Positions 3,775 through 56,099 are shown, counted from the first letter of the stretch. The stretch is DNA of 64,000 bases from IMGVR_UViG_3300035670_000008:62001-126000; one strand, 5' to 3'. The notes: a model not told the origin generated them from the letters alone. Translations and numbers: made by a program.

Positions 3775-3780
3775 AGTTGG

Positions 3781-6484: not shown

Positions 6485-6557
6485 GGGGGTATAGCTCAGT
6501 TGATGAAGCGCCTTCTTTGCAAGCCGGAAGCCAGCGGTTCGAGTCCGCTTACCTCCA
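6485..6557 (+). tRNA. tRNA-Ala(UGC), degenerate in D and anticodon arms; probable attP/pseudo-tRNA
   Basis: Acceptor GGGGGTA/TACCTCC, T arm AGCGG-TTCGAGT-CCGCT, loop TTTGCAA; anticodon stem CCTTC/GCCGG has 2 mismatches; D-loop GG lost; no CCA. Confidence 0.8.
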
Positions 6558-6583
6558 CTAAATTAAAAATCAATATATTGCTG

Positions 6584-27910: not shown

Positions 27911-29269
27911 TTACATAATCCTGGAAGCTCGCTCCGCTAATGCTGACCGCTCGCCCTTGACTAGGGTGATATGGCCTGCCAGCGGGTCACTCTTCCAAGT
28001 GCTGATGGTATAGGCAAGACCATTGCTGTCTGCTTCTAGGTACGGGTCGTCGATTTGCTCGATGTCTCCTAGTAACACAACCTTCGTACCCTCACCAGCC
28101 CGACCGATGATAGTCTTCGCCTCTGCGGGGGTTAAATTGGCTGCTTCATCGATGATGATGAATTTGTTGTTGTAGGTGACCCCTCGAATATAAGCGAGGT
28201 GTTCGCATTGAACGTAGCCGCGCTCCACTAGATATTCGTGGGGCTTAATCGGCTCTTGCTTAGCGCCGGCCTGCTTCGTACTCAGCAACGCATCTAGGCA
28301 AGCGTAGAACGGTTTCATCCAAGGCTCGCTCTTCTCAGAAAGGTCGCCTGGTAGGAAGCCTTCCTTAACGCTGTGGTGGACGTACTTGCGGGCTATCAGA
28401 ATCTGGTCGTATAGCTTAAGGTCTAAGACCGCGTGTAATGCTCCTAGAAGCGTGATAAACGTCTTTCCCGTACCAAGAGACCCATTGATAGTTACAAGCG
28501 GGATGTCGGGGTCTAGAAGCAGCTCTAGAGCCATTTGCTGCTCTCGGTTGCGGGCTCCCTTTGAACCCAACAGCCGACTCCGGTCTGGAATTAAGCGCAC
28601 CTCCGACTCCCCATCGGCGGGGTACTTAACAATCCCCAGCGCGGCATGTTTAGAATCCTCTAAAGACTCTAGATAAAGCAACTCGTTCGGCTGCGCGTCC
28701 CCCTCAAAGTCTAGGATTTTCTCTTTGTAGAGCGTGTCCACAACAGCCCGCTCAACCTGAACCGCGCGGGTGCCTGTATATAAGTCAGTGATACTGACCT
28801 TATCACTCAAGTAATCCTCAACCCGGAGCCCCAAGACGTCTGCCTTCACCCGCAGGTTCAAATCCTTAGTCACTAGGATTACCGGCACTCCATTAGAATC
28901 TAACGACAACCACTTCGTTAATAACAGGAGCCGGTTGTCCGTCTTACTTAAATCAAGCGCGGGGGCTCCAAACCCTAACAAATCCGGCTCCAACGTACCA
29001 AAGTCCCGCGCGGTGGCTACTCTAACAGTCCCACCTTCAGAATTAACTGTAACCCCTTGAGGAGCACCCAAGTCGCCAAGCAACCGTAGCTCCTCCAAAG
29101 TACGGATAGCCTCCCGCGCGGCTACCCCAACCCCATTCCCCGACCGCTGCTTTAAAGTGTCTAACTCCTCAATGACATCCAAAGAGATGACCACCGAGTT
29201 GTCCTTGAAAGACAACACCGCGGCGGGGTCATGTATCAAAACGTTCGTGTCTAAAACAAAATGCTTCAC
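27911..29269 (-). CDS. phoH: PIN-PhoH (PhoH2/YlaK-like) protein
   Basis: VLDTNVL, EELD, DNR, VTKDLNLR; GSLGTGKT, GFLPG, RG, IIDEA, GDIEQID. Confidence 0.93.
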   Translation of the reverse strand: MKHFVLDTNVLIHDPAAVLSFKDNSVVISLDVIEELDTLKQRSGNGVGVAAREAIRTLEELRLLGDLGAPQGVTVNSEGGTVRVATARDFGTLEPDLLGFGAPALDLSKTDNRLLLLTKWLSLDSNGVPVILVTKDLNLRVKADVLGLRVEDYLSDKVSITDLYTGTRAVQVERAVVDTLYKEKILDFEGDAQPNELLYLESLEDSKHAALGIVKYPADGESEVRLIPDRSRLLGSKGARNREQQMALELLLDPDIPLVTINGSLGTGKTFITLLGALHAVLDLKLYDQILIARKYVHHSVKEGFLPGDLSEKSEPWMKPFYACLDALLSTKQAGAKQEPIKPHEYLVERGYVQCEHLAYIRGVTYNNKFIIIDEAANLTPAEAKTIIGRAGEGTKVVLLGDIEQIDDPYLEADSNGLAYTISTWKSDPLAGHITLVKGERSALAERASRIM

Positions 29270-29922: not shown

Positions 29923-30031
<109 letters not shown>

Positions 30032-30363
30032 CAGCTCCGAGGGGATGGAGCCTGGTGTAATTTATGCGGCTGTTAGTCCCAATTTTGTCAACAACAGCCT
30101 AACATTAGCAATAGCTTGTTGACTAGTCATTCTCAATAAATAGGTCAAAAACCACTATTTGATTAAAAAAGACGGTTTGTTATTGACATTCACTCTCAAT
30201 AAGGGCATAAAAAGTACTTATTTTAGCCAGTTGGGGGAGGAAAAGGGGGTGGTTGGGGCAGGCTTTGGGGGGTTTTGCTAAAGGTCGGTGTTTTATAGGG
30301 GTCAAAAACAGACTTTGGGTAGTAAAAAGGGGGTAACTAGCGGAGCTAGCTACCTATCCTTAT

Positions 30364-34083: not shown

Positions 34084-34175
34084 AACGTATCCTAATCATT
34101 CGTGTAGTAAAAAGGGGGCGCCAGCCGAAGCTAGAACCTAGACTAGGAGTCTAGAATCTAACTTCGAGCTAGTGC

Positions 34176-35619: not shown

Positions 35620-36394
35620 ACTCGATTAACTCAACTAGCCGAGGGATATCGTCCGCATCCACCCAAGCAACGTCGTCGTTATGCGGGTAGACCTCCCAGC
35701 AGGCGGTTCCACTGTCGTGGAGCTCGCCAAAGGGGTCATACAACACGGACGCCTCCCCGCCTGTCCCATCTGTGATGAGAAGGCGGACTTCGGCAGTGCG
35801 GTGTGATAACACACTGACCGACCAGCCCGCTTTCATCGGTATAGGTGGGGAGGGAGGACACCGCCGCTCAGGCTCGCGGACGTTGAGGTAGACCTTGGGA
35901 GTCTCCTCCTCTTCTAGGTTGGAGAGGTAGATGTCGAGGTTGGCCTGGTCAGCCTGCCGTTGGAGCTCCTTTTCCAAGGCATCCCAATTGGCTTTCTTGG
36001 CTGCCTCGGCGAGCTGCTCCTCGTAAGCTTCGCGGTCGAGCTCCGCCAGGTATTCCCACTCGGAGAGTTGCTCCTCGTCTTGCAGAAGCCCCTCCTTCCG
36101 CAGCGATTGCTCCTCCTCGAGGTGAGCAGCCCACTCGGGGTCCCAGTAGGGACTGTCCTCACCGTACTCGGTCGGTAGCTCTTCCTCCTCGCAGGAGTAA
36201 TCCCACTCGGGAGGCTGCCCGTAGTTTTCAGCCCAGCCTGTCTCACCAAGCATCAACTGCCCGGCAATGAACTGAGCTAATAACTGAGGAAAGCTAAACG
36301 CCTCCGAACGGTCGTCCGACCAAATGTGCTCAGCACAATTAGTCAGATATTGACAGTCAGGGCCATTACCGTTGTGGTGGCGGATTATAAACAT
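35582..36394 (-). CDS. Highly acidic hypothetical protein
   Basis: AAGGAG RBS; Glu/Asp-rich core. Confidence 0.7.
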   Translation of the reverse strand: MFIIRHHNGNGPDCQYLTNCAEHIWSDDRSEAFSFPQLLAQFIAGQLMLGETGWAENYGQPPEWDYSCEEEELPTEYGEDSPYWDPEWAAHLEEEQSLRKEGLLQDEEQLSEWEYLAELDREAYEEQLAEAAKKANWDALEKELQRQADQANLDIYLSNLEEEETPKVYLNVREPERRCPPSPPIPMKAGWSVSVLSHRTAEVRLLITDGTGGEASVLYDPFGELHDSGTACWEVYPHNDDVAWVDADDIPRLVELIEYALTQTRRELYV

Positions 36395-36427
36395 TACTGT
36401 TCTCCTTTATTTTGGTTAGTGGGTAAA

Positions 36428-36613
36428 AGGTGTAGGTGGGCTTGAACCACCAAGACTCACGGATGACTAGTCCGCTAACAGCTTATTGCAATCTAGTTTC
36501 CACGCCTGCCGATCTGTACGTGGCGCCGGGAATTACCCTCTTACTACGGGAGTCACTCCGCAGCTAGGACAACTAGATTACTCACCGTCCTTACCAATTG
36601 GACGTATGCACCA
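36428..36613 (-). ncRNA. tRNA-like structured RNA with ~115-nt insert in place of the anticodon arm
   Basis: D arm GTCC-AATTGGTAA-GGAC, T arm GGTGG-TTCAAGC-CCACC, imperfect acceptor GGTGCA/TACACC, internal TAATCTAGTT/AACTAGATTG stem. Confidence 0.55.
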
Positions 36614-36742
36614 TCTGCATAACGCGGCACTATCCCCTATGCAGTCTCGGGGCGCCGAATGATACCAGTTTTAAGTCATGAGTGTCATGGACTATAACCC
36701 AGGAGCCATTGCCGAAGCAAGAGGACTATCCTGGGGCGGAGT

Positions 36743-37003
36743 TTAATTGTCCCAGATGTGTTTGGTTTCACCAAGGGCGGCGATAGGGTCGTCATCGCGG
36801 TGGTTAGCGATGTAACGACCGCGGTCGCGGTTGCGTAGGTGAACACCATACTCAGCCATCAACTCTTCGTTGAGGTCATCGACCTCAGCTCGAGCTCGTA
36901 GCTGCGAGTACGTCTGGGGACGTTGTAGAGACCCACCCGGATGTGCCTGCTGGGCGCGGCGGGTCTCCATAATTGAAGGGTAGCTTCGGCGTGTGCGTGC
37001 CAT
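36743..37003 (-). CDS. Small basic hypothetical protein
   Basis: AAGGAGG RBS. Confidence 0.7.
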   Translation of the reverse strand: MARTRRSYPSIMETRRAQQAHPGGSLQRPQTYSQLRARAEVDDLNEELMAEYGVHLRNRDRGRYIANHRDDDPIAALGETKHIWDN

Positions 37004-37222
37004 AGGCTAGTTACCCTCCTTGAACATAAGGTCTATCACCTCGGCGGTGCATAAACCAAAACAGACGAGTAAGAAGAAGAATATTAACATATCCATACCT
37101 TCATTCAACGCTCCTTCCGCTCTTTTGTACTTAATATATAAGCTAGCTGTCGGAGCAAATGGAATACCCCCAAAACAGAAGCTCTGGGGGTATAATGGTA
37201 GTGCCGTCTACCAAATACACAT

Positions 37223-38032
37223 ATGACGTTTGACTCCATTGTAACAGAGATTCAAGCTTTTATCACCGAGCTCGGTGTTGAGCCTGATGGCACATCATAT
37301 ATGGGTGCCTCACCTTTATCTACTATGTGCGGCGTGTCTCGCCAAGCTCTTTTAGATAAACGCTCATCCTCTCTAGGAATTTTTGCTCGTATCTTGTCAG
37401 GGAAAAACCTTCCAGAATGCTTGGAACCCTTTGCTGGCTTCAATTATTGGTTGTCAGGGAAGGTACCAGACAGTTTAGCCTCTGCCGTTATTTATTACTA
37501 CGCTGTAGAAGCTCGTAAGCCGTCACGTAAAGCTAAACAGGTTCTTCAAGCTCTGATCGGGAAGACTGTTAAGGATTTTATTACAGCTGCCTGCGTTGGC
37601 GTGGTATCTGATAACTCTCCAAAAACTCTTCCAGCTCGTATAACGCACGAGAGCTTTAAGAACTATATCTATAGCTTTGACCGTCCTTTGTTAGGCGCGG
37701 AGTTAGCTAACTATTTTAACGTTACGGTTTCTACCGCCCGTGACTGGGCCAATAAGCTTGAGGCTCAAGGCTTGATTACTAAAATCAAGATTAAGTCTAC
37801 AGGTCAGGTAGTCTTTGGTTACTGCAAACCTGGTATAGACCCTGACAGCGCGATCGACACATACTTTCCGGCTACCATAGTTGAGGTTAATGATTTAACT
37901 TCTCAGACTACGCCAGATGTAGCTACACCACCTAGCACCTTTTATAAAGACTTTCTTGAGTTCATCAACCGCTACGAAATATCCAGTAGCACTAAGCTGA
38001 AACTCTTGGAAGTTGCTATCACAGGCGCTTAG
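37223..38032 (+). CDS. Putative DNA-binding regulator (N-domain shared with 60393-61226, plus winged HTH)
   Basis: GAELANYFNVTVSTARDWANKLEAQGLI; TATAAT upstream. Confidence 0.65.
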   Translation: MTFDSIVTEIQAFITELGVEPDGTSYMGASPLSTMCGVSRQALLDKRSSSLGIFARILSGKNLPECLEPFAGFNYWLSGKVPDSLASAVIYYYAVEARKPSRKAKQVLQALIGKTVKDFITAACVGVVSDNSPKTLPARITHESFKNYIYSFDRPLLGAELANYFNVTVSTARDWANKLEAQGLITKIKIKSTGQVVFGYCKPGIDPDSAIDTYFPATIVEVNDLTSQTTPDVATPPSTFYKDFLEFINRYEISSSTKLKLLEVAITGA

Positions 38033-38040
38033 ACGGAGGA

Positions 38041-38071
38041 AAAAGGGGTTAGCCGAAGCTAACCTCTTTTT
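38041..38071. terminator. Bidirectional terminator
   Basis: AAAAGGGGTTAGC-cgaa-GCTAACCTCTTTTT. Confidence 0.85.
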
Positions 38072-38072
38072 A

Positions 38073-38438
38073 TTACAGAACGATGGCGCCTTGGCGGTGC
38101 TGAGCCCGCGCTACATCGTTTCTGAACGCCTGCAGGTCATCCGCAGGTAATGGGGCAAAGGACCCGTCTTCTTGGCGGAGTAAGTCCACCTCGAAGGGGA
38201 ACTGCCCCGTTAGACCGTGCAGAATTACCAGGATTCTGGATGCCAAGGGCGCCAGTCCAGGTAGCACGACCTCCACGGAGTCTCCGCTGGAGACACCTAA
38301 ACCCACTACAAAGGTGATGAGTTTAGTTTTGAGCTCGGGGTCTGCCAAGTTGACATGCAGGGCGCCTGGGAAGACGAATCCTTCGGCATTTAGGTGCGGG
38401 TTATCATGCCCGCTCAAGTTGAGTTTTAAGTGAGCCAT
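38073..38438 (-). CDS. csx15: Csx15-like protein (type III CRISPR cA4 ring nuclease/binder family)
   Basis: LNLSGH, VLPGLAP...L..LHGLTGQFP, LQAFR...AR; AGGAGG RBS. Confidence 0.7.
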   Translation of the reverse strand: MAHLKLNLSGHDNPHLNAEGFVFPGALHVNLADPELKTKLITFVVGLGVSSGDSVEVVLPGLAPLASRILVILHGLTGQFPFEVDLLRQEDGSFAPLPADDLQAFRNDVARAQHRQGAIVL

Positions 38439-38581
38439 TGGCTCGTTCCTCCTATTTATTAATTCTTCCTTCCTTCTGCTCTTTTCCCCGTGTTATCTGG
38501 CTTATTAGCTTTTTTGTAGCCAACCTACCATACTCCGGGGGCTGTCCGCAAGTAGTAAAAAAGGGGCATAGCCCCAGTGGA

Positions 38582-39466
38582 TTAAACCTCCACAACATTG
38601 AAGGTAGCCACTTCCTCTTCACAGAGAATGACTTCCCAATTCATATCGAAGTCGGTGCGCTCACCTTCCTCAGCGCCACAACCGCACCAACAGTAGTTAG
38701 TGTAGTTAGACATGGTTATCCGGTGCTTAGCCGGATCGAAGGGGCCCCATTTGGCGTGTACGCGATCTTTGGCGTACTTCACCCTAAAACTATGGTCACC
38801 GGTGACCAAAGTATTGGTGTCCTGGAACGGCAGCGCGTAGGCGTGCTGGTACTTGGTTGTATCGACCTCATACCAAATCAGTCCACTTCCGTTCCACTCC
38901 CTGAAAATGGAGAGGTAACGTCGGAGGACAGGGAAGGTGTAGGTCACCTTAACGCTTTCTCCTTCTGCGTTAAGAAAGACGAGTTTGCGTAGGGTTTGAG
39001 CTTTCGCCATGTACCCTTCGGCACGAATCAACACCACCTCGTCAGAGGTATTGATGTGTTGAAGGTACCGCTCATCAGAGCTCCCCTCCGGGTTAATATG
39101 CAGCTCTACGGCGTGCTCGAATCCCAGCGCCTCCATCTGAGCAGCGTGGGCCTTGTTTCGTGGGAATATCACATAAAGACCAGCTAACCAACCATCCTCT
39201 TCGTCCTCCGTATAGGAGTACTCAGAGAAGACTTGTACCCCGCGGTACTTCGTCCAAGCTGGCGCATCCCGGAACACCCGATACATCCACAACGCCTGGT
39301 AGCGCTGGCGGATGTATTCCACCTGGGCATAAAGCCCTAGGAGTACCTGTTCAATTTGACCTAAGAGCTCGCACTCTTGGTCTTGAACATACTCTGCATG
39401 TTGGGCGGCGATGTCACAGACCATCTTCTTATTCTCCAAATTACTACTCCATCCGCTCTTTACCAC
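38582..39466 (-). CDS. Hypothetical protein (true start probably ~39424)
   Basis: Long ORF; class II motif overlaps the annotated start. Confidence 0.7.
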   Translation of the reverse strand: MVKSGWSSNLENKKMVCDIAAQHAEYVQDQECELLGQIEQVLLGLYAQVEYIRQRYQALWMYRVFRDAPAWTKYRGVQVFSEYSYTEDEEDGWLAGLYVIFPRNKAHAAQMEALGFEHAVELHINPEGSSDERYLQHINTSDEVVLIRAEGYMAKAQTLRKLVFLNAEGESVKVTYTFPVLRRYLSIFREWNGSGLIWYEVDTTKYQHAYALPFQDTNTLVTGDHSFRVKYAKDRVHAKWGPFDPAKHRITMSNYTNYCWCGCGAEEGERTDFDMNWEVILCEEEVATFNVVEV

Positions 39467-39516
39467 CTAAGTATCGAGCTGTCGGTAGTAAAAAGGGGGT
39501 TTATCCCCCGACCACG

Positions 39517-39744
39517 CTAATATATTGGGAAGAAATTAGCGTGAAACTGCTCCTCAGGGGAGCTATAAGTGTCTTCGTGGCTTTCGCCCCACGCGGCGAT
39601 CTCCCCATCGGCGGGAGAGTAGAAGATTATGTTTGGTTTCCCGACCACGCGCCAGGCGTGGTATCGGAAGTAGTCCCCGGCTTGAAACAAGCCGAGGTCT
39701 ATCTTGGTCCCTGGTTTAGGGGGATAGTAGCTAAAAGTCGTCAT
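39517..39744 (-). CDS. Small hypothetical protein
   Basis: Flanked by class II motif and terminator. Confidence 0.65.
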   Translation of the reverse strand: MTTFSYYPPKPGTKIDLGLFQAGDYFRYHAWRVVGKPNIIFYSPADGEIAAWGESHEDTYSSPEEQFHANFFPIY

Positions 39745-39841
39745 TTCTAATTAATTGAATTCTTACACGCCTTCTGCTCTTTAATACCTGAGCATCGAGC
39801 TGTTAGCGTGTAGCAAAAAAGGGGCAGAGCCCCTAATCTAT

Positions 39842-40021
39842 CTAATTGCCCGTGGTCAGCCGCTGGAAGCGGATTGGTGCCATCCGATTAATTTCAGGTG
39901 CGTCCACCCGTGGCAAGTGTTGCACCCGGCACGCTGGCACGATCAAGATACTTCCGTCTTTTAAACGGAGAGTACCTTTATCGAGAGCTGAACCAGGACG
40001 GGCGGTAGCTAGAGTGGTCAC
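39842..40021 (-). CDS. Small hypothetical protein (59 aa, GTG start, not in track)
   Basis: Fills the unit between the class II motif at 40051 and the terminator at ~39815. Confidence 0.5.
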   Translation of the reverse strand: MTTLATARPGSALDKGTLRLKDGSILIVPACRVQHLPRVDAPEINRMAPIRFQRLTTGN

Positions 40022-40170
40022 AATAAACCTGCCTTATATTTCAAATTTCCACTCCATCCGCTCTTTTGCACCTAGCACCGAACTAAGCCAGTAGCAAAAA
40101 TAAAACCAGCTGTGCCCGAGAAAAAAGTCTGGTCTAGATAGCCTCGGGGGAGACTATCTAGACCTAGAGC

Positions 40171-40869
40171 TTAGAAGATGGAACCGTATTTAACGGCGGA
40201 ATCCATCATGGCGCTGGTGACCGTGGCATAATTGCCAGAGCCGACGAGCTTTAACCCACGGTACGCAAGGGCGACCATTTCGAGAACATCCATGGGGACT
40301 TTGACAAATTCCCCGTTGGACTTCAACCAAGTCTTGCCGCTCGGGTCATTCTGGTCTTTTACCTTGCAGGGGACTCCTTTCTTGAGTGCTAGCAAGAACA
40401 CTACCCGGGAGCCTGCGGGTACGTTCTCGGTATCCAACCATACCGATGGGGTTTTAACCATCCATTCACGAAGGCGGGTGCCCTCGACGATATTGCGAGC
40501 TTGCCCCGCTTCAGCAGCGGAGTAGAACGTAACTAGCCCATTGAGCTGGAAGTTCCAAGAGCCTTGACCCTTGACGATAGGCTGGAGAGCACCACCGATG
40601 GTCGAGCCACTCAGACCGCACCGAAGTGCTAACTTGTCTGGGTTGCCGCTGGCGTCGGTTTTGGTGTACTTGACGACCGGGTCGCCAAAGAAGCCGATGC
40701 GCACCATACGGAGAAGAGACTCCTCGATGATAATGGTTCCATCCTCATTGCCAATCTGGCGCCGGAGTTCGGCTGGCCAATTGGCAGTCAATGCAGTCAA
40801 CGTCTCGACATGGTCTTGGGCGTTGCTAGCGTTGATATAGATGGAAGCGACTTTGGTAGAATTCGACAT
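40171..40869 (-). CDS. Hypothetical protein
   Basis: GAGGA RBS; class II motif upstream. Confidence 0.8.
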   Translation of the reverse strand: MSNSTKVASIYINASNAQDHVETLTALTANWPAELRRQIGNEDGTIIIEESLLRMVRIGFFGDPVVKYTKTDASGNPDKLALRCGLSGSTIGGALQPIVKGQGSWNFQLNGLVTFYSAAEAGQARNIVEGTRLREWMVKTPSVWLDTENVPAGSRVVFLLALKKGVPCKVKDQNDPSGKTWLKSNGEFVKVPMDVLEMVALAYRGLKLVGSGNYATVTSAMMDSAVKYGSIF

Positions 40870-41065
40870 GAGATGGTCCTCTAGTAGAAAAATGAACTAC
40901 CCACTCTGCTCTTTTTGAACGCCTTTACTCCCCACCCACACCTTTTTGTTAGGCGAAAGGGTAGGACTAACTGCCAACCCTTTCAGGTTGGCTCTTACGC
41001 CGCGATTGGGTGGAGGTGGGTGTATCTAGAGAAGTTCAACTAGATACAGAGGTGGGGGAGATAGC

Positions 41066-44000
41066 CTATTTGCGGTTGGCTTTCAGCCACGCGAAGTAGT
41101 CGTGGTCTACGAAGCCTTGGCACCCGGTCAGCCAGTTAATTACCCGAGGGTCAGAGCAATCTAAGAAGACGTCCTCGATGCGCTCGAAACGAGACAGCAT
41201 CACATAGAGGGCGGCTACTCGCTGTAACGCCTGCTCTTCGCCTAAGCGGTCTTCGCTAATCGAAATGATGCCAGGGCCTTTAATGGTTAACCCTTGGCAG
41301 CTATTAATCGTAGTCGCGAAATCTGCGTGGAGGGGTAGCTGGATGAACTTACCGCTCAGCGTGCCATCGGAAAAGTGCTTGCCCTCGAACTCATGGCTTT
41401 CAATACGAACGAGCCGATGTCCGAAGTCAACGATGACGTGGTCGTTGCCTAGTGACTTAATCTTGCCCCGACTACCATTAGCGGCCAGCAAGGTCTTGTT
41501 ACCACTTACAAGCTCGTATTTATTGTTACGTAGCTTGACAGGCATGTCAATGGCCAACGTCAAATTGGCAGGGATGGGTCGGAAGTCCCGGAGCCAATTA
41601 TCGTTGGTAGCGCCTTTCCGAATGACTAGACCGTTGTAGGTCTTCTTGGTGGTGACCATCGCCTGGGTATAACGCTCGTTCACTTCAATAACGCGACGGT
41701 TATTGTAGAAGATATGAACAGCGTTCTCAGGCGGGGTGACTACGCCGTTGATGCAGTCAGCAAAACGCTGTGCAATAACCCCAGTAATCATCCCAGTCTC
41801 ACGTAGGATGTCCAGGGCTTCCTGGTAAGCAGGGTCACCTTTCTGACGCACGCCGGTGTTTAGCTCAACGATGCTGAACGGACGGGTGGTTCCGTTGAAA
41901 CCATTGATTAGGCTGCCTTGGTTAGCTTTACAGCCGTTGATGAAGACATCTTGGTAGAACTTCACGGCTTTGTTATCGCTAACCGGCAGCTGACCACCGT
42001 CACCTACGAGCAGGATTTGGGCGAGTGGGTTCAGGCGTTTGATAATGTTGAAGACAACAAACAACACCCGTCCATCCACCATGGATACCTCGTCGATAAC
42101 TACGCGCAAGCGCTGACCGGTCTTGCAGGTCAAGCTTTGCTTAACGTAGTTATTCGTCAGAGACTTCATCACCATCGACTGAGCCCACTGCCAATCGGTG
42201 GTGCCAGGGGTGCGCTTCTCGCTGAAGTCAATACCCAAACCGAAACCACTGTTAAGCGTTCCTAGCGCACCGTAAGCGCCTTCCTGTAGGCTACCGCCGA
42301 GGTTCATCACGGAGATACCCGTAGAACCAAAGACGACGACCTTGTCACCAGCGGCTGCCCAACGGTGGATGGTTTCGGCAGTGATGAAGGTCTTGCCGGT
42401 ACCAGCCTTACCGGTCAAGAAGATGTTGTCACCCTGCTCCACCAGGGCTAAGAACTTTTTTTGACAGCTGGTTAGGTTGTCGATTTCGGCTAGCTCGATA
42501 GGTAAACCGCAGGTGGGTTCAGCGGCAGGAGCTTCGGAGATAGTAGGGATAGAAGGGAGAGTTTGCATAGTAGCCTCAGGGTTAGGAGTTTCTATGCTAT
42601 CTGCTTTTTTCCCTGCTTTCTCTTTACTTTCTTGTAGGTCAGTAATAACCGTTGTGTCAGCTACGCGAGCAATGTTTGCTTTGGAGCCTTTGGAGTGCCC
42701 GTCCCAAATGACGATACTCTTATGGCAACCATCGTGCATGACAGCATCACGTTGCGTATAGCTACCATTTACGCAGATAGTAGGGTAGCCTACGTTATTA
42801 CGACAACGATTTGCGTAGTAAACGGTTACTTCGCAGCCACGTCCTAGCAGATACTGCTGTACAGCAAGGTCAATACCTGTAGCATCACCAACTCGGAATG
42901 TAGCACCGGCTTGGATGTAAGCATCGATCTCTACCTTTGCTTTATCAGGTAGTTCTTTGATCGAACGGCTGCCGGAGACAACTACAACCGCACGCTTTGG
43001 CTCAACTGCTCCATCTATTTCCATTAGTTCGCCAAATATCCAGCAGTCTTTCTCTTCAGACCAATCGTAGAAAAGCTTGGTTACTTCGCCAGTGCTAGCT
43101 AGATAAAGCCAAGAAGCTTCAAACAAATTTACGATGTGCTGGCTGGGGCGGTAGCTAGGTAGTGAGTAATTAACTGCATAGACTACATCCCGAATGGCGT
43201 TCAAGAAGTCGCAGGCCTGTACGTTGTACAACCAAGGATGTTCTATGAAGGCACCTTTAGCTCCATGCTCAATGACGAAGCAGTAAGTGTCAGGGAACAG
43301 GTCGAAGTCTCCAGACCACGGCTGGCTCTGTTTACCGTCATACCAATCCTTGGCTTCTTGTAGTGCCTCGTTGAAACTATCAACAGCCCCTGTATTGCTG
43401 ATATCTGGGTAGCCGTAAAAGTAATCTACTAACCCAGTTTCCCAAAGGTAGACTAGATAATCTTCCTTAGTTAGGCTACATTCGCGGCTGGAGTTGCCAT
43501 AGGAGAATACCAATGTGTTAGCGAAGATATTATCCAGCTCGTCCATTGAGATAATGCCGTTGTGTAGCAGGTCGCCCATGGTACGTTTACCTTCAACGAA
43601 ACTATTAATATACAGCTCGTCGATATAAGGTTTGATACTTTCAACAAAAGCATCAGCAACCTTAATCCGGTTGGCGGTGGGCTTAACCTCTGTAGCTACC
43701 ACATCAATGGTAGCCCCGGAGGGCTCTACAGAAGCAGGGGCCTCTGTAGATTCAGCGGTGGGTTCGGCGTCTACAACGGCAGCGAAGCCGCCATCAGACG
43801 GAGGAGTTGGCTCCTTGGGAGTAGCAGGTACAGACCCACTACCAGAGTCGTCAGAGCCTTCGTCTTCAGGCTTCTCGTCGTTAGATGCCGAACCGTTCGT
43901 CGGCTCAACTCCCAACTGTACAGCCAGAGCAGCTAGCACACGCTCGGCAGCAGCGTCGCCAAACTCAGCCCGCACTTCATCAACGATGGAGCGGACTTTC

Positions 44001-47000
44001 TGTTGGCGAGCGGTGCGTTCGGCTTTAGCGCGCTCTTCTGCTTTAACTTGCTCAGCGATGGCAACCAGCATAGCTACCGTGGCGTCACTCTCAGCGGCGG
44101 CTTCGAGGACATCGACGATAGGCACAGCAGTTACTTCTGCTTCCTCAGCGACCTGGGTAACCACAGGCGTAGGAGCCACGATGGGTGCAGGTGCAGGTGC
44201 AGGTGCAGGTGCAGGTGCAACGGGAGCTGGGGCGGTAGGAGCTGGGTCGATGACCTGCGTAGGGACAGGCGCGCTGCTAGGCTCGAACTTATCAGAAGAC
44301 AGCACTATATCAGGGTCTTCATAGTCGTCGAAGGCGGCTGAGCCTGCAAGGTCTAGCTCTTCTTCATCCCAGCGTCCATCATCCATGCCCTCGAATGGGT
44401 CTTCGTGAGTCAACCCATTGTCGATGACCAACTCGGCTGCTGGTTCATCGTTAGCGGTTGGGGCGGAGGCTTCCGCAGTATTCCAAGAGAGTGCATTGGC
44501 AATCTCCTGAGCAGTCTGGGTAGTCGGGCCGACCTCCATGATTGGTTTAATTTCCATTTCTCCTTCGACCTCTGGAGTAGAATGACGGAGCTCTAGTTTA
44601 TAGCGGAAGTAATCCATGGCGGGACGAGCTCCTGTGTCATCCATGAATTCATAACCGGTGCCAGGTAGGTATTTACATACGTCGCCCAGAACAGATTTCT
44701 GGAACATACGACGTAGTACCCATAGTACATGGGACTCGGTATAGACTTCCTCAGGGATTGTTACACCCGCAACTGGATTACCCAAGGCATACCAGTGGAA
44801 CAACTGACGAGTAACCTGTAGGTGACAGATTACTTTGTTTTCGTCCCAGTCGTTCTCGCCATTGAGGTAGCCTTTGAAGTAACCCACCCATTTGCCGCGG
44901 GTCATTTCAAACTGAGCGAAGGAATTATATTTGATAAATCCTTCTAACCCAACGCTGGCGTCAGCTTCGGTACCGTAGAGCATACCTTTCTCCCATGCTT
45001 TAACTTCGGCTAACAGGTTAAAGCACTCGGCAATCTCCATACCGGCAGTACCGTTACAGCCCATCGCTTCAACAGCCGCGATGAACTCTTCGATGCTCTT
45101 CACATCGTTGTAGCGGAACATCGTGACGTAGTTAGGGCGGGGTACTTTAACACCCAGACCTGTATCTACGAATTCAGGACGGCTGACGGCTTGGACGTAG
45201 TCTACCCACATACGCCAGGTCGGTTTGGTGTAGGCACCGAGAATGGTTTCATAAATCTCAGCTACGATAGCCACGATTTGAAACGCATTATCACTGGCGG
45301 CCCACTTGAGGGAGTCGGGAATCTCAACACCACACTTCTTGAGAGCAGTGACGATGTTGATTACACCTTCGCCGAGCTGATAGATACCGTAGGACACACC
45401 CACCATGGTGGTGAACACTTCGCGGGCGCGAATGTTGGTGTCCGCGTAGCTATCAACCTCAACCTCTTTACCTTTGATGGTGACCTTAATAGGATTGATA
45501 GCACCTTGTAAAGCACCATCTTTCGGGTCAACTTTCACGAAGGAGGAGAGGTTCTCGACGATGCGTAGGCGACTCCAGCCGTTCTTGGGCATCATGTAGT
45601 CACCCCAGTAGCATTCCTTGCGGATGAGGGTAGCCCAAGGAGATTCTCCAGGACGTTGACCCACAGCACCGGCACGGAAGGCAACAGCAGACTCAGCCGT
45701 GGTAACTAGACTGAGTAGCATTTGCAGGGTGTGCCCACATGTCCAGGGCAGGATAACGCCGTAGGTGCCGTCGCCGTCATTATCCCCAGCGGTCATCAAG
45801 TTGTGAGCCAAGGGGCTCATCAACCGGGTAGCGCCGTAGATAACGTCGAGCTGTACGACGGGCTGATTGTTCTCATCCAGCAGAGGCTTACGGTCTTTGT
45901 AGACAATGTAAGTCGGGTCGCTGGGCGCGTAGTAGAACGATTCGATAGCCTTACGGGTGTAGGGCAGAATCGTCACCAAACCAATCGAGCCGTCGGGCAT
46001 AGGCGAACGAGTCTCATGGTTGATGATGGGGGTCGGATACGCAGCTAACCCAAGACGAAGAGCAGTCTCGAACGTGGGGCAGTCCCGGTCAAGGCTATAC
46101 TTAGTCATTTCAGAGGTGAACTGACCAGTAGTAGCATCGAACACAGGGCGCTCGTAGCCACGCACGTACTGTTTCATCAAGTCGTACTGCATACCACCCT
46201 CTACTACTAAGAACATCCAGGTGGGGATGTTGGGTAGCGACAGTGCTTTACCACCAATCATCCGGTCACCACCGATATTCTTGGCGTTGCTGGAAGATTC
46301 GGTGAGGGCACGTAGTTTACCGCGCAGACGGTTGACATCGATGGCGCTCGGTAACTGACCAGCTAGGAGCGTAATCAGATACTGGTAGAAGAAGATGCCA
46401 GATGCTGTCTCTAGGCACTCCTCACCACTCTTCAACGAGTTGAGGTTGAAGAGCATAGGAGTGTAGATATCGATGTGGCGCACGATGTTGGAATCATCGT
46501 ACTCGTCTTCCCACTCATCGTAGTCACAGTCGTAGCTATCGTAGTCCCACTCATAATCCTCGTAGTCGGGAGCCTTCGTTTTGATATGGTCGAAGGTTAA
46601 CTTACGAGGAGTAGAGGTTACAACACGAATCACTACGTTCCGTAGGGCGTGGCAGACCTTACCAAACAGGGCGTCGTCGTCTGGATTGCTGAGGTCTACA
46701 TCAACTAGCAACTCACGGACGCGAGCCATACCTTCTTCATTAGGCACAGCTTCCCAAGATTTAACACCACGGCTAGTAACCTCTTGCCAGTTGGCGAGGG
46801 TGATGGTTTCTAGCAAGGTGGAGTCGTAGTCCATCGAGCCGTCGTACATGGCGCAGAGCAGCTTCGCACGGTAGGGAGATTCCAACGCGCGCACGGCTTG
46901 TCCTTCCATCACTTCACGGATAGCCTTGTTAGGCATCAAGCGATAGTTAGAACGAAGCGCAGCGCCTAGCTGATGAGAATCACCAGCGGCTTCTTCTACA

Positions 47001-50000
47001 GTGCTGCTTTCAAACAACACGACGTCGTAGATGGGGCAGTCGCAATCAGCACGACCAGCCAGCACCCAACCACGCTGCTGCATGACGGAGACGTTTCCGT
47101 CTCCGTTCAGGTGGAACCAGAAGATGTTGGCACGTTCTTCCGCGCGGCTACCTTTGTGGTTTGCAGGGTCGAGGAGGTCTACATCACTCAACACTACGGT
47201 ACGAGTGAAGACTTTGTCTCCCACGATGACCTTGCGGTCGACCACTGGGCCGATGTTGGCAGAGGTGACGTCATACATTAGCCCTTTGGGTTTGCCGTTG
47301 TCGTCCTTGGCATCCACAGCTGCTAGGTACAGTTCGAGTAGTTTGTTACCATACTCGCCGTACTCTAGGTCTGCCCAGGTCACAGTCAGCTGCTGCCCGA
47401 AGAACTCAGCAAACGCCTTCTGTAGCGCATCGTAAGCACCTGAGTTGATACCCACCGGGTCTTCAATGAGATAGTCTAAGTGGCGGCGGCCATCATACTT
47501 CTCATTTAGGTCCATACCCATCTCCCGCAGCGCCAAGAACCGGGGGTCTTGACAGTCTTTGTTGAAGACCAACGTATGGGAGATATAGGGGATATTACAG
47601 TGGGTCGTATCCATCTTCAGAACGTCCTGAGGTAACAACAGCTCAGCAACGCGCGGGCTGATGTTTGGATTATCGTTGTTGAAGATAGACTCGGCGTGCA
47701 TAGACGCGACCATACCTTTGACGACGGAGCTACGAAGCTTACCCCAGTCTTCGGCTTTGGTTACAGCCCACTCGACCACGAACTCAACTGCTTTCGTGCC
47801 AGTCTCTAGCGTGCGGGTGGTATAGGTACGCACCCACTCTAGGTAGCCAGTGAAGTCACGGGTCTGCTTGGCAGCACGAAGGTAGGGCTGATTATCCTTG
47901 AGCTTGGCACCGGTGTTGATTTGAGCCAACACATCGCCCTTGCGGACCAACTGCAGCTCGGTCGGGCGGTAGTAGGTATAGGTGATACCATACTCAACCT
48001 CTGTGGTCTTGGTGTGTTCACACCCCATGAGCACGGTGCCCATGTCAATTACCAGAGGATTTGCCCGATCGAACTTGCTGGAGCGGTAGGACATCTTCTT
48101 GGTAACGAAGCCCCGAGGACGGGAGTATTTGCTACCCAAATGCCACGCCTGACCTGCAATGCCTGTCATGGTCATACCGAGGATGACCTTCTGTAAGGTA
48201 CCTTCCAAGGGTAGGACTTGACCGACTGCCATTGAGCCACCTTTAACCTGATAGAAATCAGGCGGCATGGTACTCATAGCGATGGTGTTAGGCTCGTTGC
48301 CGTAGCCACCCTCTTTGATGAGTCGCTCCAACTCGGGCCGACCCTCGAAGTCAATCACGCAGCCGGAGGGCACAGAGGTAGGAGCTCGTAGGTCAAGACG
48401 CTTCGAGCCCTTCGCCGTCTTGGTGTTCAAGTTGGCGAACATCCAAGCGAGGTCACCACCAAAGCCGTTAGCCTCAGCAACAGCGCGAAGTTCTTCATAC
48501 CACGTGGGCGCCAGGTTTTTCAGGCGACCAAGGTCAACGTGGCAGATGTTGCCGCTACGCGCGGTGCCTTTGTTGAAGGAGAACCCCATGCTGAGCTCAC
48601 CGGTAATCCGGGTGATGAGCATCTGCATGATTTCGGAATCCTTCACCTGACCACGCAGACGGAAGGAGTGATACTCCTTGGTCAGACGGCCAGCGCCAGC
48701 ACCAGCGAAGTCTTTGAATTTGACCTTGCCGTTCTCTACTACCAAGGGCTCAGGATAGTAGACCACCATGTTGTTGTCTTTATCCCGATTCACCATCACA
48801 CCCACGATGCTATAGCTATTAGCTTCAGCATGTAGGGTGGGGCCAGACATGTTCATCGTCCCATCGCTAGTGACAGGGAAGAACTTGTCAGTTTTGGTGT
48901 GGAATGCAGCCAAGTTCGCAGACACGTTCCGTGTGGTAGCAGAGGCAACCAACTGACCGCTGAGTAGGGCGACGTAGCCGTAGTAGAACAGCCGCATGAA
49001 GCCACCGAAGGAATCACAACCCCGGATGGAGTGGATAAGCTTCTGGGACTTCTTGGTCTCAGGGTCACGGTAGTTTTCCCAAACTACTTCGATGACGCCC
49101 TTGAACATACGGTCACGGCGGCCATCAACAACACCCAGTTCAGTCATGCGAAAGTCGAGGCTCTCCTCTAGAACAATCGCATTGTTCTCCCACTTGATGA
49201 ACTGATCAGCGTAGTCCTCACCGATGTAGCTACGAATGATTCGGACCAGTGCCTCAAAATGCACGGGCTTCCATTCGTAACCGGATAAGGAACCAAGGTT
49301 GCCAGCCGGGTCTTTGCCCATACAGGCAGCCAAATACGCATGACACGCGTAGGCCGCAGGACGTAGCCCGTGATTCAACAACGTAGTACCATCTTGCAGG
49401 ACGGTGTTGTTGTTAATCCAGGTGTGGAAGTTGTCCTTGGTATAGGCCTTCCAATCTACGGCTACCAACTCGTCAGTCGTGATTTTCTGAATCGAGTTAT
49501 AGTAGGCGCGCAGTTCAGCCACGCGATCAAGGATGGCTTCTTTGGGGGTGCGGGCGTCAATTGTTACCTCAGGCTCGGTAGCCACAGGTGGGATGACTTC
49601 GATAGGCGCAGGCGCGGGAGCGGCAGGGGGTGGTGTGGTTTCCTGTTCCATAGGCACGGGTTTGCCGGGTAACAAACCACCATGCTCCTCGAAGTACTTG
49701 CAGGTGCGAGTACGTTCAAGGTCGCTCATATCCAGGCGAGGGTCGCCATGGTCCATACGCGGGCTGAATGCGTTGACCGGATACATACCTGTGTAAGGCT
49801 TCTTGTACCGGAGGATGCGCTCACCGTAGACGGTCTCAACCACGGCTTCCAGAGCGGTGGTATCAAAATGGTTGATACCCTTCTGGTCAAACACCCAATC
49901 AGCGGCCTGTAGCAGCGTGATGTTGTTGCAATACATCCGCTGAGAGGTGTGCTGTTGGTCAACACCAGGGGTAAGGTCACCGACCACAGTGTTGTCCTTA

Positions 50001-55655: not shown

Positions 55656-56099
55656 TTAGAAGCCGAATTCAGCCTCAATATCGAACATAAAATCCTCTAC
55701 ATTGGATTCGATGACAGCTCCGAATTGGAGCGTGGCTGCTAGCTGGTTTAGTTTGTCTTCAGACCGAGCTTTGGCAACTCGTAATGCCTCAGCGGCAGCT
55801 TGAACAGCTGCTTTCTTTTCGATTAAAGACTCAGCTCGTAATACTTCTGCTTTTTGTAAAGCAGAGTATTCACGCGCTTGCTCATTAGTATTTGCGGTTT
55901 CTTTGGTTAGACGACCATGCAGGGCATCCAACTTTTCCTCCACTGTTAGGGTAGGAGCCGCCGCGGGAGCGGTGACTTCCTCTACCGGGGCTACCGGTAG
56001 ATTAGCAGAAGAAGAAGAAGAAGAAGAAGAAGAAGAAGAAGAAGAAGAAGAAGAAGAAGAAGAAGAAGAAACAACGTAGCCAAAGTTGAAAACTGTCAT
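55656..56099 (-). CDS. Coiled-coil protein, paralog B, with Ser21 tract
   Basis: Highly similar to 56560-56970. Confidence 0.85.
   Translation of the reverse strand: MTVFNFGYVVSSSSSSSSSSSSSSSSSSSSSANLPVAPVEEVTAPAAAPTLTVEEKLDALHGRLTKETANTNEQAREYSALQKAEVLRAESLIEKKAAVQAAAEALRVAKARSEDKLNQLAATLQFGAVIESNVEDFMFDIEAEFGF
56007..56069. repeat. (AGA)21 in-frame trinucleotide tract
   Basis: Encodes 21 Ser (TCT). Confidence 0.95.

What the first reader, a model, noticed from the sequence alone, without database searches (positions are those of the whole stretch)
38073..38490. Stand-alone phage Csx15-like gene: candidate anti-type III CRISPR
Seen: a 121-aa protein with Csx15-like motifs, its own class II motif, a strong RBS and a terminator, with no cas genes or array in the window. 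Known: Csx15 accompanies type III systems and is linked to cA4 binding/turnover; viral ring nucleases (AcrIII-1) neutralise type III immunity; type III is common in cyanobacteria. Inference: a captured ring nuclease or sponge used as an anti-CRISPR.
Basis: partly seen in the sequence, partly recalled or inferred. Interest (0 to 1): 0.8.

Follow-up and report, generated by a model that had tools for sequence, protein, structure and literature searches.

The report
Phage-borne Csx15 cyclic-nucleotide ring nuclease homologue
A 216-kb phage genome carries a stand-alone copy of Csx15, a protein that bacteria use to bind or destroy the cyclic-oligoadenylate alarm signal of type III CRISPR immunity, so the phage most likely uses it to silence that alarm; the idea has been proposed in the literature but has not been tested.

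Summary
Window 38073-38438 (-) is a 121-aa ORF with an AGGAGG ribosome-binding site. It lies between two terminator hairpins, in an almost complete 216.6-kb phage genome that has no Cas10 gene and no CRISPR array.

The protein is a divergent but genuine Csx15:
- It scores below the curated cut-off of NCBIfam CAS_Csx15 (27.9 against 35 bits).
- A profile of its close homologues finds solved Csx15 structures (E 1e-6; 2e-15 with a broader profile).
- hhalign to canonical-like Csx15 gives 99.9% probability.
- The AlphaFold model (pLDDT 91) matches Csx15 clusters at TM 0.74.
- Every residue shown by mutagenesis to matter in Csx15 is invariant in its close homologues: S9/H11, H74, F94, R106, R111, R115.

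The gene belongs to a clade of about 140 protein clusters. Nearly all are metagenomic. Every context I could read is phage-like and lacks cas genes, with one exception: a cyanobacterial MAG where the gene sits in a type III-like locus. A pair of phage copies shows dN/dS of 0.03.

The best explanation is a phage ring nuclease or sponge for cA4 that blunts type III CRISPR signalling and possibly CBASS. A preprint of October 2026 tentatively named viral Csx15 "AcrIII-3", so this is a new member of a known kind. The activity is untested and the host is only inferred.

The parts
38073..38438 (-). Csx15-like gene, 121 aa. Motifs: N-terminal KLNLSGH (S9, G10, H11), PG (60-61), LHGLTGQFP (H74), F94, and the C-terminal arginines R106, R111 and R115.
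   Evidence: ORF. Csx15 HMM hits. Profile against PDB Csx15. hhalign 99.9%. Model with pLDDT 91 and TM 0.74 to Csx15 clusters. Conserved columns.
38448..38453 (-). Ribosome-binding site AGGAGG, 9 nt upstream of the ATG.
   Evidence: Read directly from the sequence.
38439..38562 (-). A 124-nt leader between the upstream terminator and the ATG. It begins with the ACTAC part of the TTTTTACTAC box (38552-38561). The consensus scan finds no sigma-70-type promoter here.
38556..38575 (-). Intrinsic-terminator-like hairpin GGGGC-TAT-GCCCC plus a T run. It closes the upstream 294-aa gene and isolates the Csx15-like gene as its own unit.
38040..38071 (.). Bidirectional terminator hairpin (AAAAAG-GGGTTAGC-CGAA-GCTAACC-TCTTTTT). 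It is shared by the Csx15-like gene (- strand) and the converging 269-aa HTH gene (+ strand, ends at 38032).
   Evidence: -15.1 kcal/mol, z = -3.1.

Best explanation
The gene encodes a small Rossmann-like protein of the Csx15 family that the phage makes during infection.

Proposed mechanism, by analogy with solved and assayed Csx15 proteins:
1. The protein forms dimers.
2. When the host's type III CRISPR complex (Cas10) makes cyclic tetra-adenylate (cA4), the dimers stack head to tail into filaments.
3. Each cA4 is clamped between the 'head' of one dimer (S9, H11) and the 'tail' of the next (H74, F94, R106, R111, R115).
4. The signal is then either cut to linear A2 products (ring nuclease) or simply held (sponge).
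5. Either way the cA4-dependent effector nucleases stay off and the phage escapes type III immunity.

Some Csx15 enzymes also cut cA3, cA5, cA6 and the CBASS signals cAAG and cAAA, so the same protein may also blunt CBASS.

Shown here: family membership, conservation of the functional residues, phage context without cas genes, and purifying selection.
Inferred: ligand, filament formation, cleavage versus sequestration, and the effect on immunity.
For: Homology:
- NF040560 CAS_Csx15, E 2.2e-6. All 29 close homologues hit it, best E 1e-13.
- The profile of the close homologues finds PDB 9tet_A 'CRISPR-associated Csx15' at E 1.2e-6, and the only other hits with E below 1 are Csx15 (9teu) and the Csx15 domain of Cash (9ylu).
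- The broader profile gives 2.1e-15 and 2e-13 over nearly the full length.
- hhalign of the phage clade against a canonical-like group that includes a CRISPR-linked member: probability 99.9%, E 2.4e-31.

Fold:
- AF2 model pLDDT 91, pTM 0.81.
- TM 0.74/0.72 to ESM Atlas clusters named Csx15. TM 0.75 to a 125-aa AFDB cluster.
- PDB matches are enriched in SAVED and CARF cyclic-nucleotide sensors, including the viral SAVED ring nuclease 9r8s. This is what was reported for Csx15 itself.

Residues:
- H11 aligns with Pf H11, Cli H13 and Ha H8 (catalytic or binding). H74 aligns with Pf H82 and Cli H90. F94 aligns with Cli Y113. R106/R111/R115 align with Pf R116/R120/R123.
- All of these residues are invariant in the 29 close homologues.

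Context:
- Virus record, CheckV 96% complete. It has tail fibre, terminase, RNR, helicases and PhoH.
- No Cas10, no array, no AcrIII-1.
- Relatives lie in other phage-like contigs without cas genes.

Selection: dN/dS 0.028 between two phage copies.

Precedent:
- CliCsx15 neutralises cA4-dependent immunity in vivo.
- Viral ring nucleases AcrIII-1 and AcrIII-2 exist, and viral Csx15 has been proposed as AcrIII-3.
Against: - No biochemical or genetic test exists for this protein or for any viral Csx15.
- The protein itself scores below the curated NCBIfam cut-off (27.9 against 35 bits).
- The arginine triad has a different spacing (R-x4-R-x3-R here, R-x4-R-x2-R in most of the clade, R-x3-R-x2-R in canonical Csx15). 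It lies in the least confident part of the model (pLDDT 52-61 for the last 20 residues).
- Published authors argue that Csx15 is poorly suited to viruses, because turnover is slow and type III systems make too much cOA for a sponge to absorb.
- The host is unknown, so it is not shown that the host has a cA4-signalling type III system.
- No RNA data were found to show expression.
Confidence: 0.6

Rival explanations
1. The protein is a general cyclic-oligonucleotide eraser aimed mainly at CBASS or other cA3/cAAG-type signalling, rather than at type III CRISPR. The chemistry and fold are the same but the target pathway differs.
For: - CsCsx15 and HaCsx15 cut cA3-cA6 and the CBASS signals 3'3'3'-cAAG and 2'3'3'-cAAA, and the authors raise this possibility for viral homologues.
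- The closest solved folds are CBASS SAVED domains: Cap5 Z 6.9, and also Cap14 and Cap4.
- The altered arginine spacing could reflect a different ligand.
Against: - PfCsx15 and CliCsx15 are specific for cA4.
- Csx15 is strongly linked to Cas10 in genomes and only weakly to CBASS.
- The only cellular members of this branch whose context I could read sit beside CRISPR components: RAMP-like and CARF-like genes in one case, RT-Cas1 in the other.
Confidence: 0.2
2. The protein is a sensor or regulator for the phage's own benefit. It binds the host's cOA alarm and, by forming filaments, changes the phage programme or recruits another phage protein, without lowering cOA enough to matter.
For: - The Csx15 domain serves as the cA4 sensor in Cash (Schlafen-Csx15) and in other fusions.
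- Its neighbours are all of unknown function.
Against: - The protein is a bare 121-aa domain with no fused effector.
- No partner gene is conserved across the contexts.
- The catalytic histidine is invariant.
Confidence: 0.08
3. It is not a phage weapon but host CRISPR-accessory DNA. Either it is a passenger gene recently picked up and without a role in infection, or it is a 'dampener' that protects a lysogen from type III autoimmunity.
For: - Klimavicius et al. found that viral Csx15 lies mostly in prophage regions of IMG/VR.
- One clade member is in a cyanobacterial type III-like locus.
Against: - The clade occurs in many unrelated phage backgrounds, with GC from 26% to 52%.
- dN/dS is 0.03.
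- It has a syntenic position in a distant relative of this phage.
- Only 1 of 401 sampled genomes of the MAG's phylum has a match.
- The family and domain searches I ran on parts of this genome named no integrase. I did not search for one specifically.
Confidence: 0.06
4. It is not a functional Csx15 at all. On this view it is a generic small Rossmann-like phage protein, for example of the Pam3 gp32-like kind, whose similarity to Csx15 has no bearing on function.
For: - The score is below the NCBIfam cut-off.
- The ESM Atlas language-model feature neighbours and one structural neighbour (TM 0.62) are Pam3_gp32 (PF23992) phage clusters.
- Foldseek E-values against the PDB are all at or above 0.03.
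Against: - No member of the family hits PF23992 or any other Pfam family.
- Profile and profile-profile statistics against Csx15 are strong.
- The Csx15 functional residues are invariant, which a drifting fold would not keep.
Confidence: 0.04

Closest known systems
Csx15 ring nucleases and sponges of type III CRISPR loci: PfCsx15 and CliCsx15 (PDB 9TET and 9TEU; I assigned the entries from residue numbering), HaCsx15 and CsCsx15
   Same: - Size (118-139 aa) and Rossmannoid fold.
- N-terminal NxSGH motif, PG and HGxxGxFP motifs, the aromatic residue before the last helix, and the C-terminal arginine cluster.
- Profile E 2e-15 and 2e-13; TM 0.74 to Csx15 clusters.
   Different: - Encoded by a phage and not next to cas genes.
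- Below the curated HMM cut-off.
- About 30-36% identity to canonical members.
- One or two extra residues between the arginines.
- Shorter middle region than PfCsx15 and CliCsx15.
- Activity unknown.
Viral Csx15 homologues, tentatively 'AcrIII-3' (vCsx15 of Lokiarchaeota virus Skoll and more than 20 metagenomic sequences; bioRxiv 10.64898/2026.10.26.761840)
   Same: A stand-alone Csx15 homologue in a viral genome, known only from metagenomes and proposed to be an anti-CRISPR ring nuclease. This IMG/VR record may even be one of their sequences, which I could not check.
   Different: - They describe viral Csx15 as rare and mostly in prophage regions.
- Here it lies in a 96%-complete 216-kb jumbo phage genome. 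It belongs to a clade of about 140 clusters at 90% identity, and every context I could read but one is phage-like.
AcrIII-1 (DUF1874, viral counterpart of Crn2)
   Same: A small stand-alone viral protein proposed or shown to remove cA4 and defeat type III CRISPR. It is more common in viruses than in cells.
   Different: An unrelated fold and family. There is no PF08960 match anywhere in this genome and no Pfam hit for this protein. AcrIII-1 acts as a dimer that encloses cA4 and is fast. Csx15 acts through filaments.
AcrIII-2, the viral SAVED ring nuclease (PDB 9R8S)
   Same: - Fold-level relative: Foldseek probability 0.75, VIA Z 4.8.
- Head-to-tail assembly with a composite active site that uses a histidine and arginines.
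   Different: SAVED is a fused pseudo-dimer of about 235 aa. This protein is a single half-unit of 121 aa that would have to dimerise.
Phage cyclic-nucleotide sponges (Acb2, Tad1, Tad2)
   Same: If the protein is catalytically inactive like PfCsx15, it would work the same way, by sequestering the signal.
   Different: No sequence or fold relation was found. Those sponges target CBASS and Thoeris signals.

Membership tests
Csx15 (CRISPR-associated Rossmann-like cOA-binding protein or ring nuclease) | Significant sequence homology to experimentally characterised or solved Csx15 proteins | tested here: met
   Profile A1 against PDB 9tet_A: E 1.2e-6. Profile A2: 2.1e-15 and 2e-13, residues 4-115. 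hhalign A1 against A5: 99.9%, E 2.4e-31.
Csx15 (CRISPR-associated Rossmann-like cOA-binding protein or ring nuclease) | Score at or above the curated cut-off of NCBIfam NF040560 (an operational criterion for naming) | tested here: not met
   27.9 bits against a cut-off of 35. Other clade members do pass: P0045 scores 39.8 bits, and the best of the 29 homologues reaches E 1e-13. I therefore call this protein a divergent family member, not an equivalog.
Csx15 (CRISPR-associated Rossmann-like cOA-binding protein or ring nuclease) | Rossmannoid fold with a central beta-sheet flanked by helices, like Csx15 and a SAVED half-domain | tested here: met
   Model pLDDT 91. TM 0.74/0.72 over 109 residues to clusters named Csx15. 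TM 0.75 to an AFDB cluster. SAVED and CARF are the top PDB folds. The solved Csx15 entries themselves did not appear among the structural matches.
Csx15 (CRISPR-associated Rossmann-like cOA-binding protein or ring nuclease) | 'Head' residues: an N-terminal serine and the catalytic or binding histidine (Pf S9/H11, Cli H13, Ha H8) | tested here: met
   S9-G10-H11 align with NFSGH of 9tet and 9teu. They are invariant in the 29 homologues, and H11 is invariant across all 36 diverse members.
Csx15 (CRISPR-associated Rossmann-like cOA-binding protein or ring nuclease) | Central histidine of the HGxxGxFP motif (Pf H82, Cli H90) and the base-stacking aromatic (Cli Y113) | tested here: met
   H74 and F94 align with them and are invariant in the clade. 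Their roles are described.
Csx15 (CRISPR-associated Rossmann-like cOA-binding protein or ring nuclease) | 'Tail' arginine triad on the C-terminal helix (Pf R116/R120/R123, Ha R118/R122/R125) | tested here: inconclusive
   Three invariant arginines, R106, R111 and R115, align with the triad. The alignment needs 1-2 inserted residues, and the region has low model confidence. The geometry was not tested.
Csx15 (CRISPR-associated Rossmann-like cOA-binding protein or ring nuclease) | Genomic association with a type III CRISPR locus or Cas10 | tested here: not met
   There is no Cas10, no array and no other cas hit in the 216.6-kb genome. This is expected for a viral copy, and 25% of cellular Csx15 also lie in genomes without type III.
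Csx15 (CRISPR-associated Rossmann-like cOA-binding protein or ring nuclease) | cA4-induced head-to-tail filament formation, and cA4 binding or cleavage | not testable with these tools
   This needs DLS or SEC-MALS, HPLC-MS, or multimer modelling with a ligand. The structure tool folds single chains only.
Viral Csx15, 'AcrIII-3' (tentative) | A Csx15 homologue encoded in a virus genome | tested here: met
   Virus record, CheckV 96% complete. Terminase, tail and replication genes are present.
Viral Csx15, 'AcrIII-3' (tentative) | Inhibits type III CRISPR immunity | not testable with these tools
   This has not been shown for any viral Csx15.
AcrIII-1 / Crn2 (DUF1874) | DUF1874 (PF08960) domain | tested here: not met
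   The protein has no Pfam hit and the genome has no PF08960 match.
SAVED domain (including AcrIII-2 vSAVED) | Two fused CARF-like halves in one chain of about 230 aa or more | tested here: not met
   The protein has 121 aa and a single domain. It aligns to one half of Cap5 or vSAVED at Z 4.8-6.9. No Pfam SAVED hit.
Pam3_gp32 (PF23992) phage protein family | Sequence match to PF23992 | tested here: not met
   None of 36 family members hits it at E <= 0.1. The resemblance is at fold level only, TM 0.62.

The most novel reading that the evidence does not exclude
Viral Csx15 may not be a rarity. On this reading the gene represents a large, predominantly phage-borne Csx15 clade of about 140 clusters at 90% identity. 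The clade is found in jumbo cyanophage-like genomes and in unrelated AT-rich phages, is under strong purifying selection, and has its own arginine spacing. It would then be a widespread anti-cyclic-oligoadenylate weapon. The rare cyanobacterial CRISPR-linked copy (P0045) would have been taken back from phages, as has been argued for AcrIII-1 and Crn2. This would overturn the published view that Csx15 kinetics make it unsuitable for viruses.
Probability: 0.35. Interest if true: 0.7.

Novelty: new member of a known kind. Interest (0 to 1): 0.5.

Why it matters
Type III CRISPR systems defend through cyclic-oligoadenylate signalling, and few viral counter-measures are known: AcrIII-1, the viral SAVED protein AcrIII-2, and 2H phosphodiesterases.

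Csx15 was characterised only in 2026. One group reported none in cultured phage genomes. Another found about 20 metagenomic viral homologues and left them untested.

This locus adds three things:
- a concrete, almost complete phage genome with an intact Csx15 gene flanked by its own terminators;
- a set of about 140 related clusters to choose test proteins from;
- one cellular relative in a type III-like locus for comparison.

Testing the protein would settle whether filament-forming Csx15 can work as an anti-CRISPR. It would also show whether phage versions are faster enzymes or sponges, and whether they also disarm CBASS.

Tried and rejected
Searches that gave nothing:
- DNA similarity of window 36000-41000 to 50,697 phage and 72,556 plasmid records: no match.
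- tblastn of the protein against the phage collection: no match at E <= 0.01.
- Pfam and PHROGs for the protein: no hit. Pfam on 36 family members: only chance-level hits.
- Foldseek and VIA against the PDB listed no solved Csx15 entry. Only SAVED and CARF folds appeared, at weak scores. I do not know whether 9TET and 9TEU were in that copy, which holds entries released up to April 2026.
- BFVD viral structures: nothing convincing.

- Genome contigs with the pattern KLNLSGHxN found no relative.
- Relatives cannot be drawn for a virus record.

False positives discarded: P0036 and P0075 are long repeat proteins. P0061 is a tandem double-Csx15 protein.

Host clues that failed:
- HIP1 is not enriched.
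- The over-represented palindrome GTAGCTAC is not iterated in any of 401 sampled cyanobacterial genomes.
- The phage DNA has no match in the cyanobacterial MAG G001.
- No RNA run was listed for the gene.

Other negatives:
- No partner gene is conserved beside the Csx15-like gene across contexts.
- The neighbours (294 aa and 269 aa) stayed unexplained.
- The tree is too poorly resolved to give a direction of transfer.

Full report
**1. The observation**

Window 38073-38438 on the minus strand is an ATG-initiated ORF of 121 codons. An AGGAGG box lies at 38448-38453, 9 nt before the ATG.

Two nucleotides after the stop codon comes a hairpin with A/T-run arms at 38040-38071. Its energy is -15.1 kcal/mol, z = -3.1, and none of 200 shuffles folds as well. 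It faces both ways and also ends the converging 269-aa HTH gene. A second terminator-like hairpin (38563-38575 plus a T run) closes the upstream 294-aa gene. The ORF therefore lies between two terminators, with a 124-nt leader.

The consensus scan finds no sigma-70-type promoter in that leader. The only recurrent element I found is the box TTTTTACTAC directly after the upstream terminator. It occurs four times in the window, always on the minus strand and always after a terminator, against 0.37 expected.

**2. The genome**

The window is bases 62001-126000 of a single 216,563-bp virus record. It is classed as linear, and CheckV rates it 96% complete.

It encodes:
- a tail-fibre protein, an Ig-rich tail protein, a PIN-PhoH protein and a glycosyltransferase;
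- ribonucleotide reductase, helicases and a large terminase;
- three giant ORFs of 4239, 5112 and 6943 codons.

The terminase is closest to the Microcystis Ma-LMM01 group and to a Microcoleus phage (31-32% identity, E 1e-58 to 6e-68). The next best hits are at E 1e-12 to 1e-16. A cyanobacterial host is therefore plausible but not shown. The runs that hold the sequence are labelled subsurface or soil metagenomes.

The genome has no Cas10 by two models, no CRISPR-like array, no DUF1874, and a single Csx15-like gene.

**3. Is it Csx15?**

Taken alone, the protein hits NCBIfam CAS_Csx15 at E 2.2e-6, which is below the curated cut-off (27.9 against 35 bits), and PADLOC Csx15 at 3.4e-5. Pfam and PHROGs have nothing.

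The sequence evidence from its relatives:
- Twenty-nine homologues of 48-63% identity exist, all metagenomic. Every one hits CAS_Csx15, best E 1e-13.
- A profile of these finds PDB 9tet_A 'CRISPR-associated Csx15' at E 1.2e-6. The only other hits with E below 1 are 9teu 'csx15' and the Csx15 domain of the Schlafen fusion Cash.
- With more distant relatives added, the profile aligns residues 4-115 to 9tet and 9teu at E 2.1e-15 and 2e-13.
- hhalign between the phage clade and a canonical-like group gives 99.9% probability, E 2.4e-31.

The structural evidence:
- The AlphaFold2 model is confident (pLDDT 91, pTM 0.81; only the last ~20 residues are weak).
- It superposes on ESM Atlas clusters named Csx15 at TM 0.74/0.72 over 109 residues, and on a 125-aa AFDB cluster at TM 0.75.
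- No solved Csx15 entry appeared among the structural matches against the PDB copy. The best folds there are SAVED domains (Cap5 Z 6.9, Cap14, Cap4, the viral SAVED ring nuclease 9r8s) and CARF domains (Can2, Cad1, Crn1-type, Csm6). This is the same pattern that was reported for Csx15 itself.

**4. Functional residues**

Two 2026 preprints define the mechanism. Csx15 dimers stack head to tail on binding cA4, and the ligand sits between the dimers.
- The head contributes a serine and a histidine (Pf S9/H11, Cli H13, Ha H8). H8A and H13A abolish cleavage, and H11A abolishes binding.
- The tail contributes a central histidine (Pf H82, Cli H90), an aromatic residue (Cli Y113) and three arginines (Pf R116/R120/R123, Ha R118/R122/R125).

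The numbering in the HMMER alignments fits 9tet = PfCsx15 and 9teu = CliCsx15, each with a 7-residue tag. That assignment is my inference. On it, S9, H11, H74, F94, R106, R111 and R115 of the phage protein are the equivalents.

All seven are invariant in the 29 close homologues. H11 and R106 are invariant, and H74, R111 and R115 nearly so, across the 36 diverse members.

The one structural difference lies between the arginines. The phage clade has one extra residue, and this protein has two (R-x4-R-x3-R against R-x3-R-x2-R).

Residue conservation cannot tell a nuclease from a sponge, because the inactive PfCsx15 has the same residues.

**5. The family and its contexts**

An exhaustive HMMER scan of 1.84 billion representatives found only 46 clusters at 50% identity. 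Two are false (repeat proteins) and one is a tandem double-Csx15. A profile search of 5.8 billion proteins gave 179 clusters at 90% identity.

A quick tree puts 144 of 154 rows, including the query, on one side of a branch with SH-aLRT 91. Ten canonical-like rows fall on the other side. Resolution inside the large clade is poor.

The contexts I could read:
- L001 is a 32-kb contig that shares four genes with the window, among them the giant helicase-bearing ORF. The Csx15-like gene lies two genes downstream of that giant ORF, as it does, more loosely, here.
- L005 and L006 are IMG/VR contigs of 91 and 136 kb with 26-28% GC. They share nothing with this phage except the gene.
- L029 is a 129-kb contig with homing endonucleases, a phage lysozyme and ThyX.
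- L030, L004, L021 and L022 are arrays of small genes without Pfam hits and without cas genes.
- No neighbour is conserved across these contexts.
- The L005 and L006 copies differ by 18 synonymous and 2 non-synonymous changes, giving dN/dS 0.028.
- None of 50,697 deposited phage genomes has the gene. This agrees with the report that Csx15 is absent from the Millard phage set.

**6. Cellular relatives**

One clade member, P0045 (45% identical to the query), is annotated by NCBI as Csx15 in 'Cyanobacteria bacterium P01_E01_bin.42'.
- Its 7-kb contig also carries a 559-aa protein with weak RAMP matches, a 303-aa protein with a weak TIGR02710 CARF match, and ordinary cellular genes.
- The 7.2-Mb MAG has at least two full-length Cas10/Cmr2 ORFs.
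- Only this genome, out of 401 sampled from its phylum, matches the family profile.
- About a fifth of 101 sampled genomes of that phylum, all of 3.5 Mb or more, carry a Cmr2-type Cas10.

A canonical-like member, P0060 (36% identical), lies in a Hydrogenedentes MAG next to an RT-Cas1 fusion and another TIGR02710-like protein.

The branch is thus tied to type III loci where it is cellular. Most of its members with readable context are in phages. P0045 sits inside the large clade on a long branch, so the direction of transfer is open.

**7. Interpretation**

The best-supported reading is a phage-encoded Csx15 that binds cA4 between stacked dimers and cleaves or sequesters it, which turns off cA4-dependent type III effectors.

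CliCsx15 does this in vivo when over-expressed. Viral Csx15 has been tentatively named AcrIII-3, without any test. Because some Csx15 enzymes also cut cA3 and CBASS trinucleotides, a broader anti-signalling role is the main rival.

Arguments against the reading:
- published doubts that a slow, filament-dependent enzyme or a sponge can cope with the amounts of cOA that type III systems make;
- the altered arginine spacing;
- the unknown host;
- the lack of expression data.

I put 0.9 on 'Csx15-family cOA-binding protein' and 0.6 on 'acts as an anti-type III CRISPR'.

**8. Novelty**

Csx15 as a ring nuclease or sponge, viral ring nucleases as anti-CRISPRs, and the existence of viral Csx15 homologues have all been described. 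This is therefore a new member of a known kind.

What may be new is the size and mostly phage-borne nature of the clade. That is at odds with the description of viral Csx15 as rare and mostly in prophages. I checked too few contexts to claim it.

Noticed in passing
Whole genome G000; 19 copies in the window (e.g. 3671, 5599, 37919, 43692, 61262): The palindrome GTAGCTAC occurs 51 times in 216.6 kb against about 3 expected. The copies are scattered, mostly inside genes, and have no conserved flanks, like a highly iterated palindrome. HIP1 (GCGATCGC) is not enriched (2 copies). None of 401 sampled cyanobacterial genomes has more than 138 copies.
   Followed up: partly
window 30319-30328, 34104-34113, 38552-38561, 39485-39494 (all - strand): A GC-rich terminator hairpin is followed directly by the box TTTTTACTAC: four copies against 0.37 expected. 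The stretches after the 39485 site and a variant site at about 39820 share further similarity (CTCGAT..AGGT..TAAAGAGC). This may be a phage-specific terminator-promoter junction.
   Followed up: partly
window 41066-53785 (-); also G000 126233-141571 (-) and 178373-199204 (+): Three giant ORFs of 4239, 5112 and 6943 codons. The first has an AAA_33 kinase-like domain (residues 673-798) and a C-terminal SF1/PIF1-like helicase (3775-3934). The first 5000 residues of the second have no Pfam hit. A related giant protein in L001 carries 2OG-Fe(II) oxygenase and NADAR domains.
   Followed up: partly
L005:9907-10850 and L006:9910-10850: A 944-bp cassette is 92.7% identical between two otherwise different AT-rich IMG/VR phage contigs. 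It holds the Csx15-like gene and a 129-aa cysteine-rich gene, which suggests that the pair moves between phages.
   Followed up: partly
L001:12808-13434 and L001:14364-15536: In the related phage contig, a 208-aa tRNA_lig_CPD (2H-phosphoesterase-type) gene and an IS605 TnpB lie a few genes from the Csx15-like gene. Viral 2H phosphodiesterases are known to degrade cyclic oligonucleotides, so this may be an anti-defence island. PF08302 has no match in the window's own genome, but that search also found nothing in any control genome.
   Followed up: partly
L024:2350-3261 and L018:5996-6772: In both cellular loci, Csx15 is next to a 258-303-aa protein with a weak match to the TIGR02710 CRISPR-associated CARF family (E about 1e-5). 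This is a possible recurrent Csx15 partner or effector.
   Followed up: no
window 38073-38438 (the protein's fold): The model resembles clusters of the Pam3_gp32 family (PF23992, from a Pseudanabaena cyanophage) at TM 0.62, and the MJ1673 family at TM 0.53, without sequence similarity. These small phage protein families might be further Csx15-like or CARF-like folds.
   Followed up: partly
window 29924-30029 and 56008-56070: A (CA)53 microsatellite of 106 bp and a (GAA)21 tract of 63 bp, both unusual in a phage genome.
   Followed up: no
window 27911-29269 (-): A PIN-PhoH fusion protein of 452 aa: PIN_4 E 5e-26, PhoH E 8e-37, phrog_2765 E 4e-86.
   Followed up: no
window 6485-6558 (+): tRNA-Ala(TGC), the only tRNA and the only Rfam hit in the window.
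   Followed up: no
P0061 (327 aa, metagenomic): A protein made of two tandem Csx15-like domains. It matches the published 'duplicated Csx15' group, which has been proposed as the route to SAVED domains.
   Followed up: no
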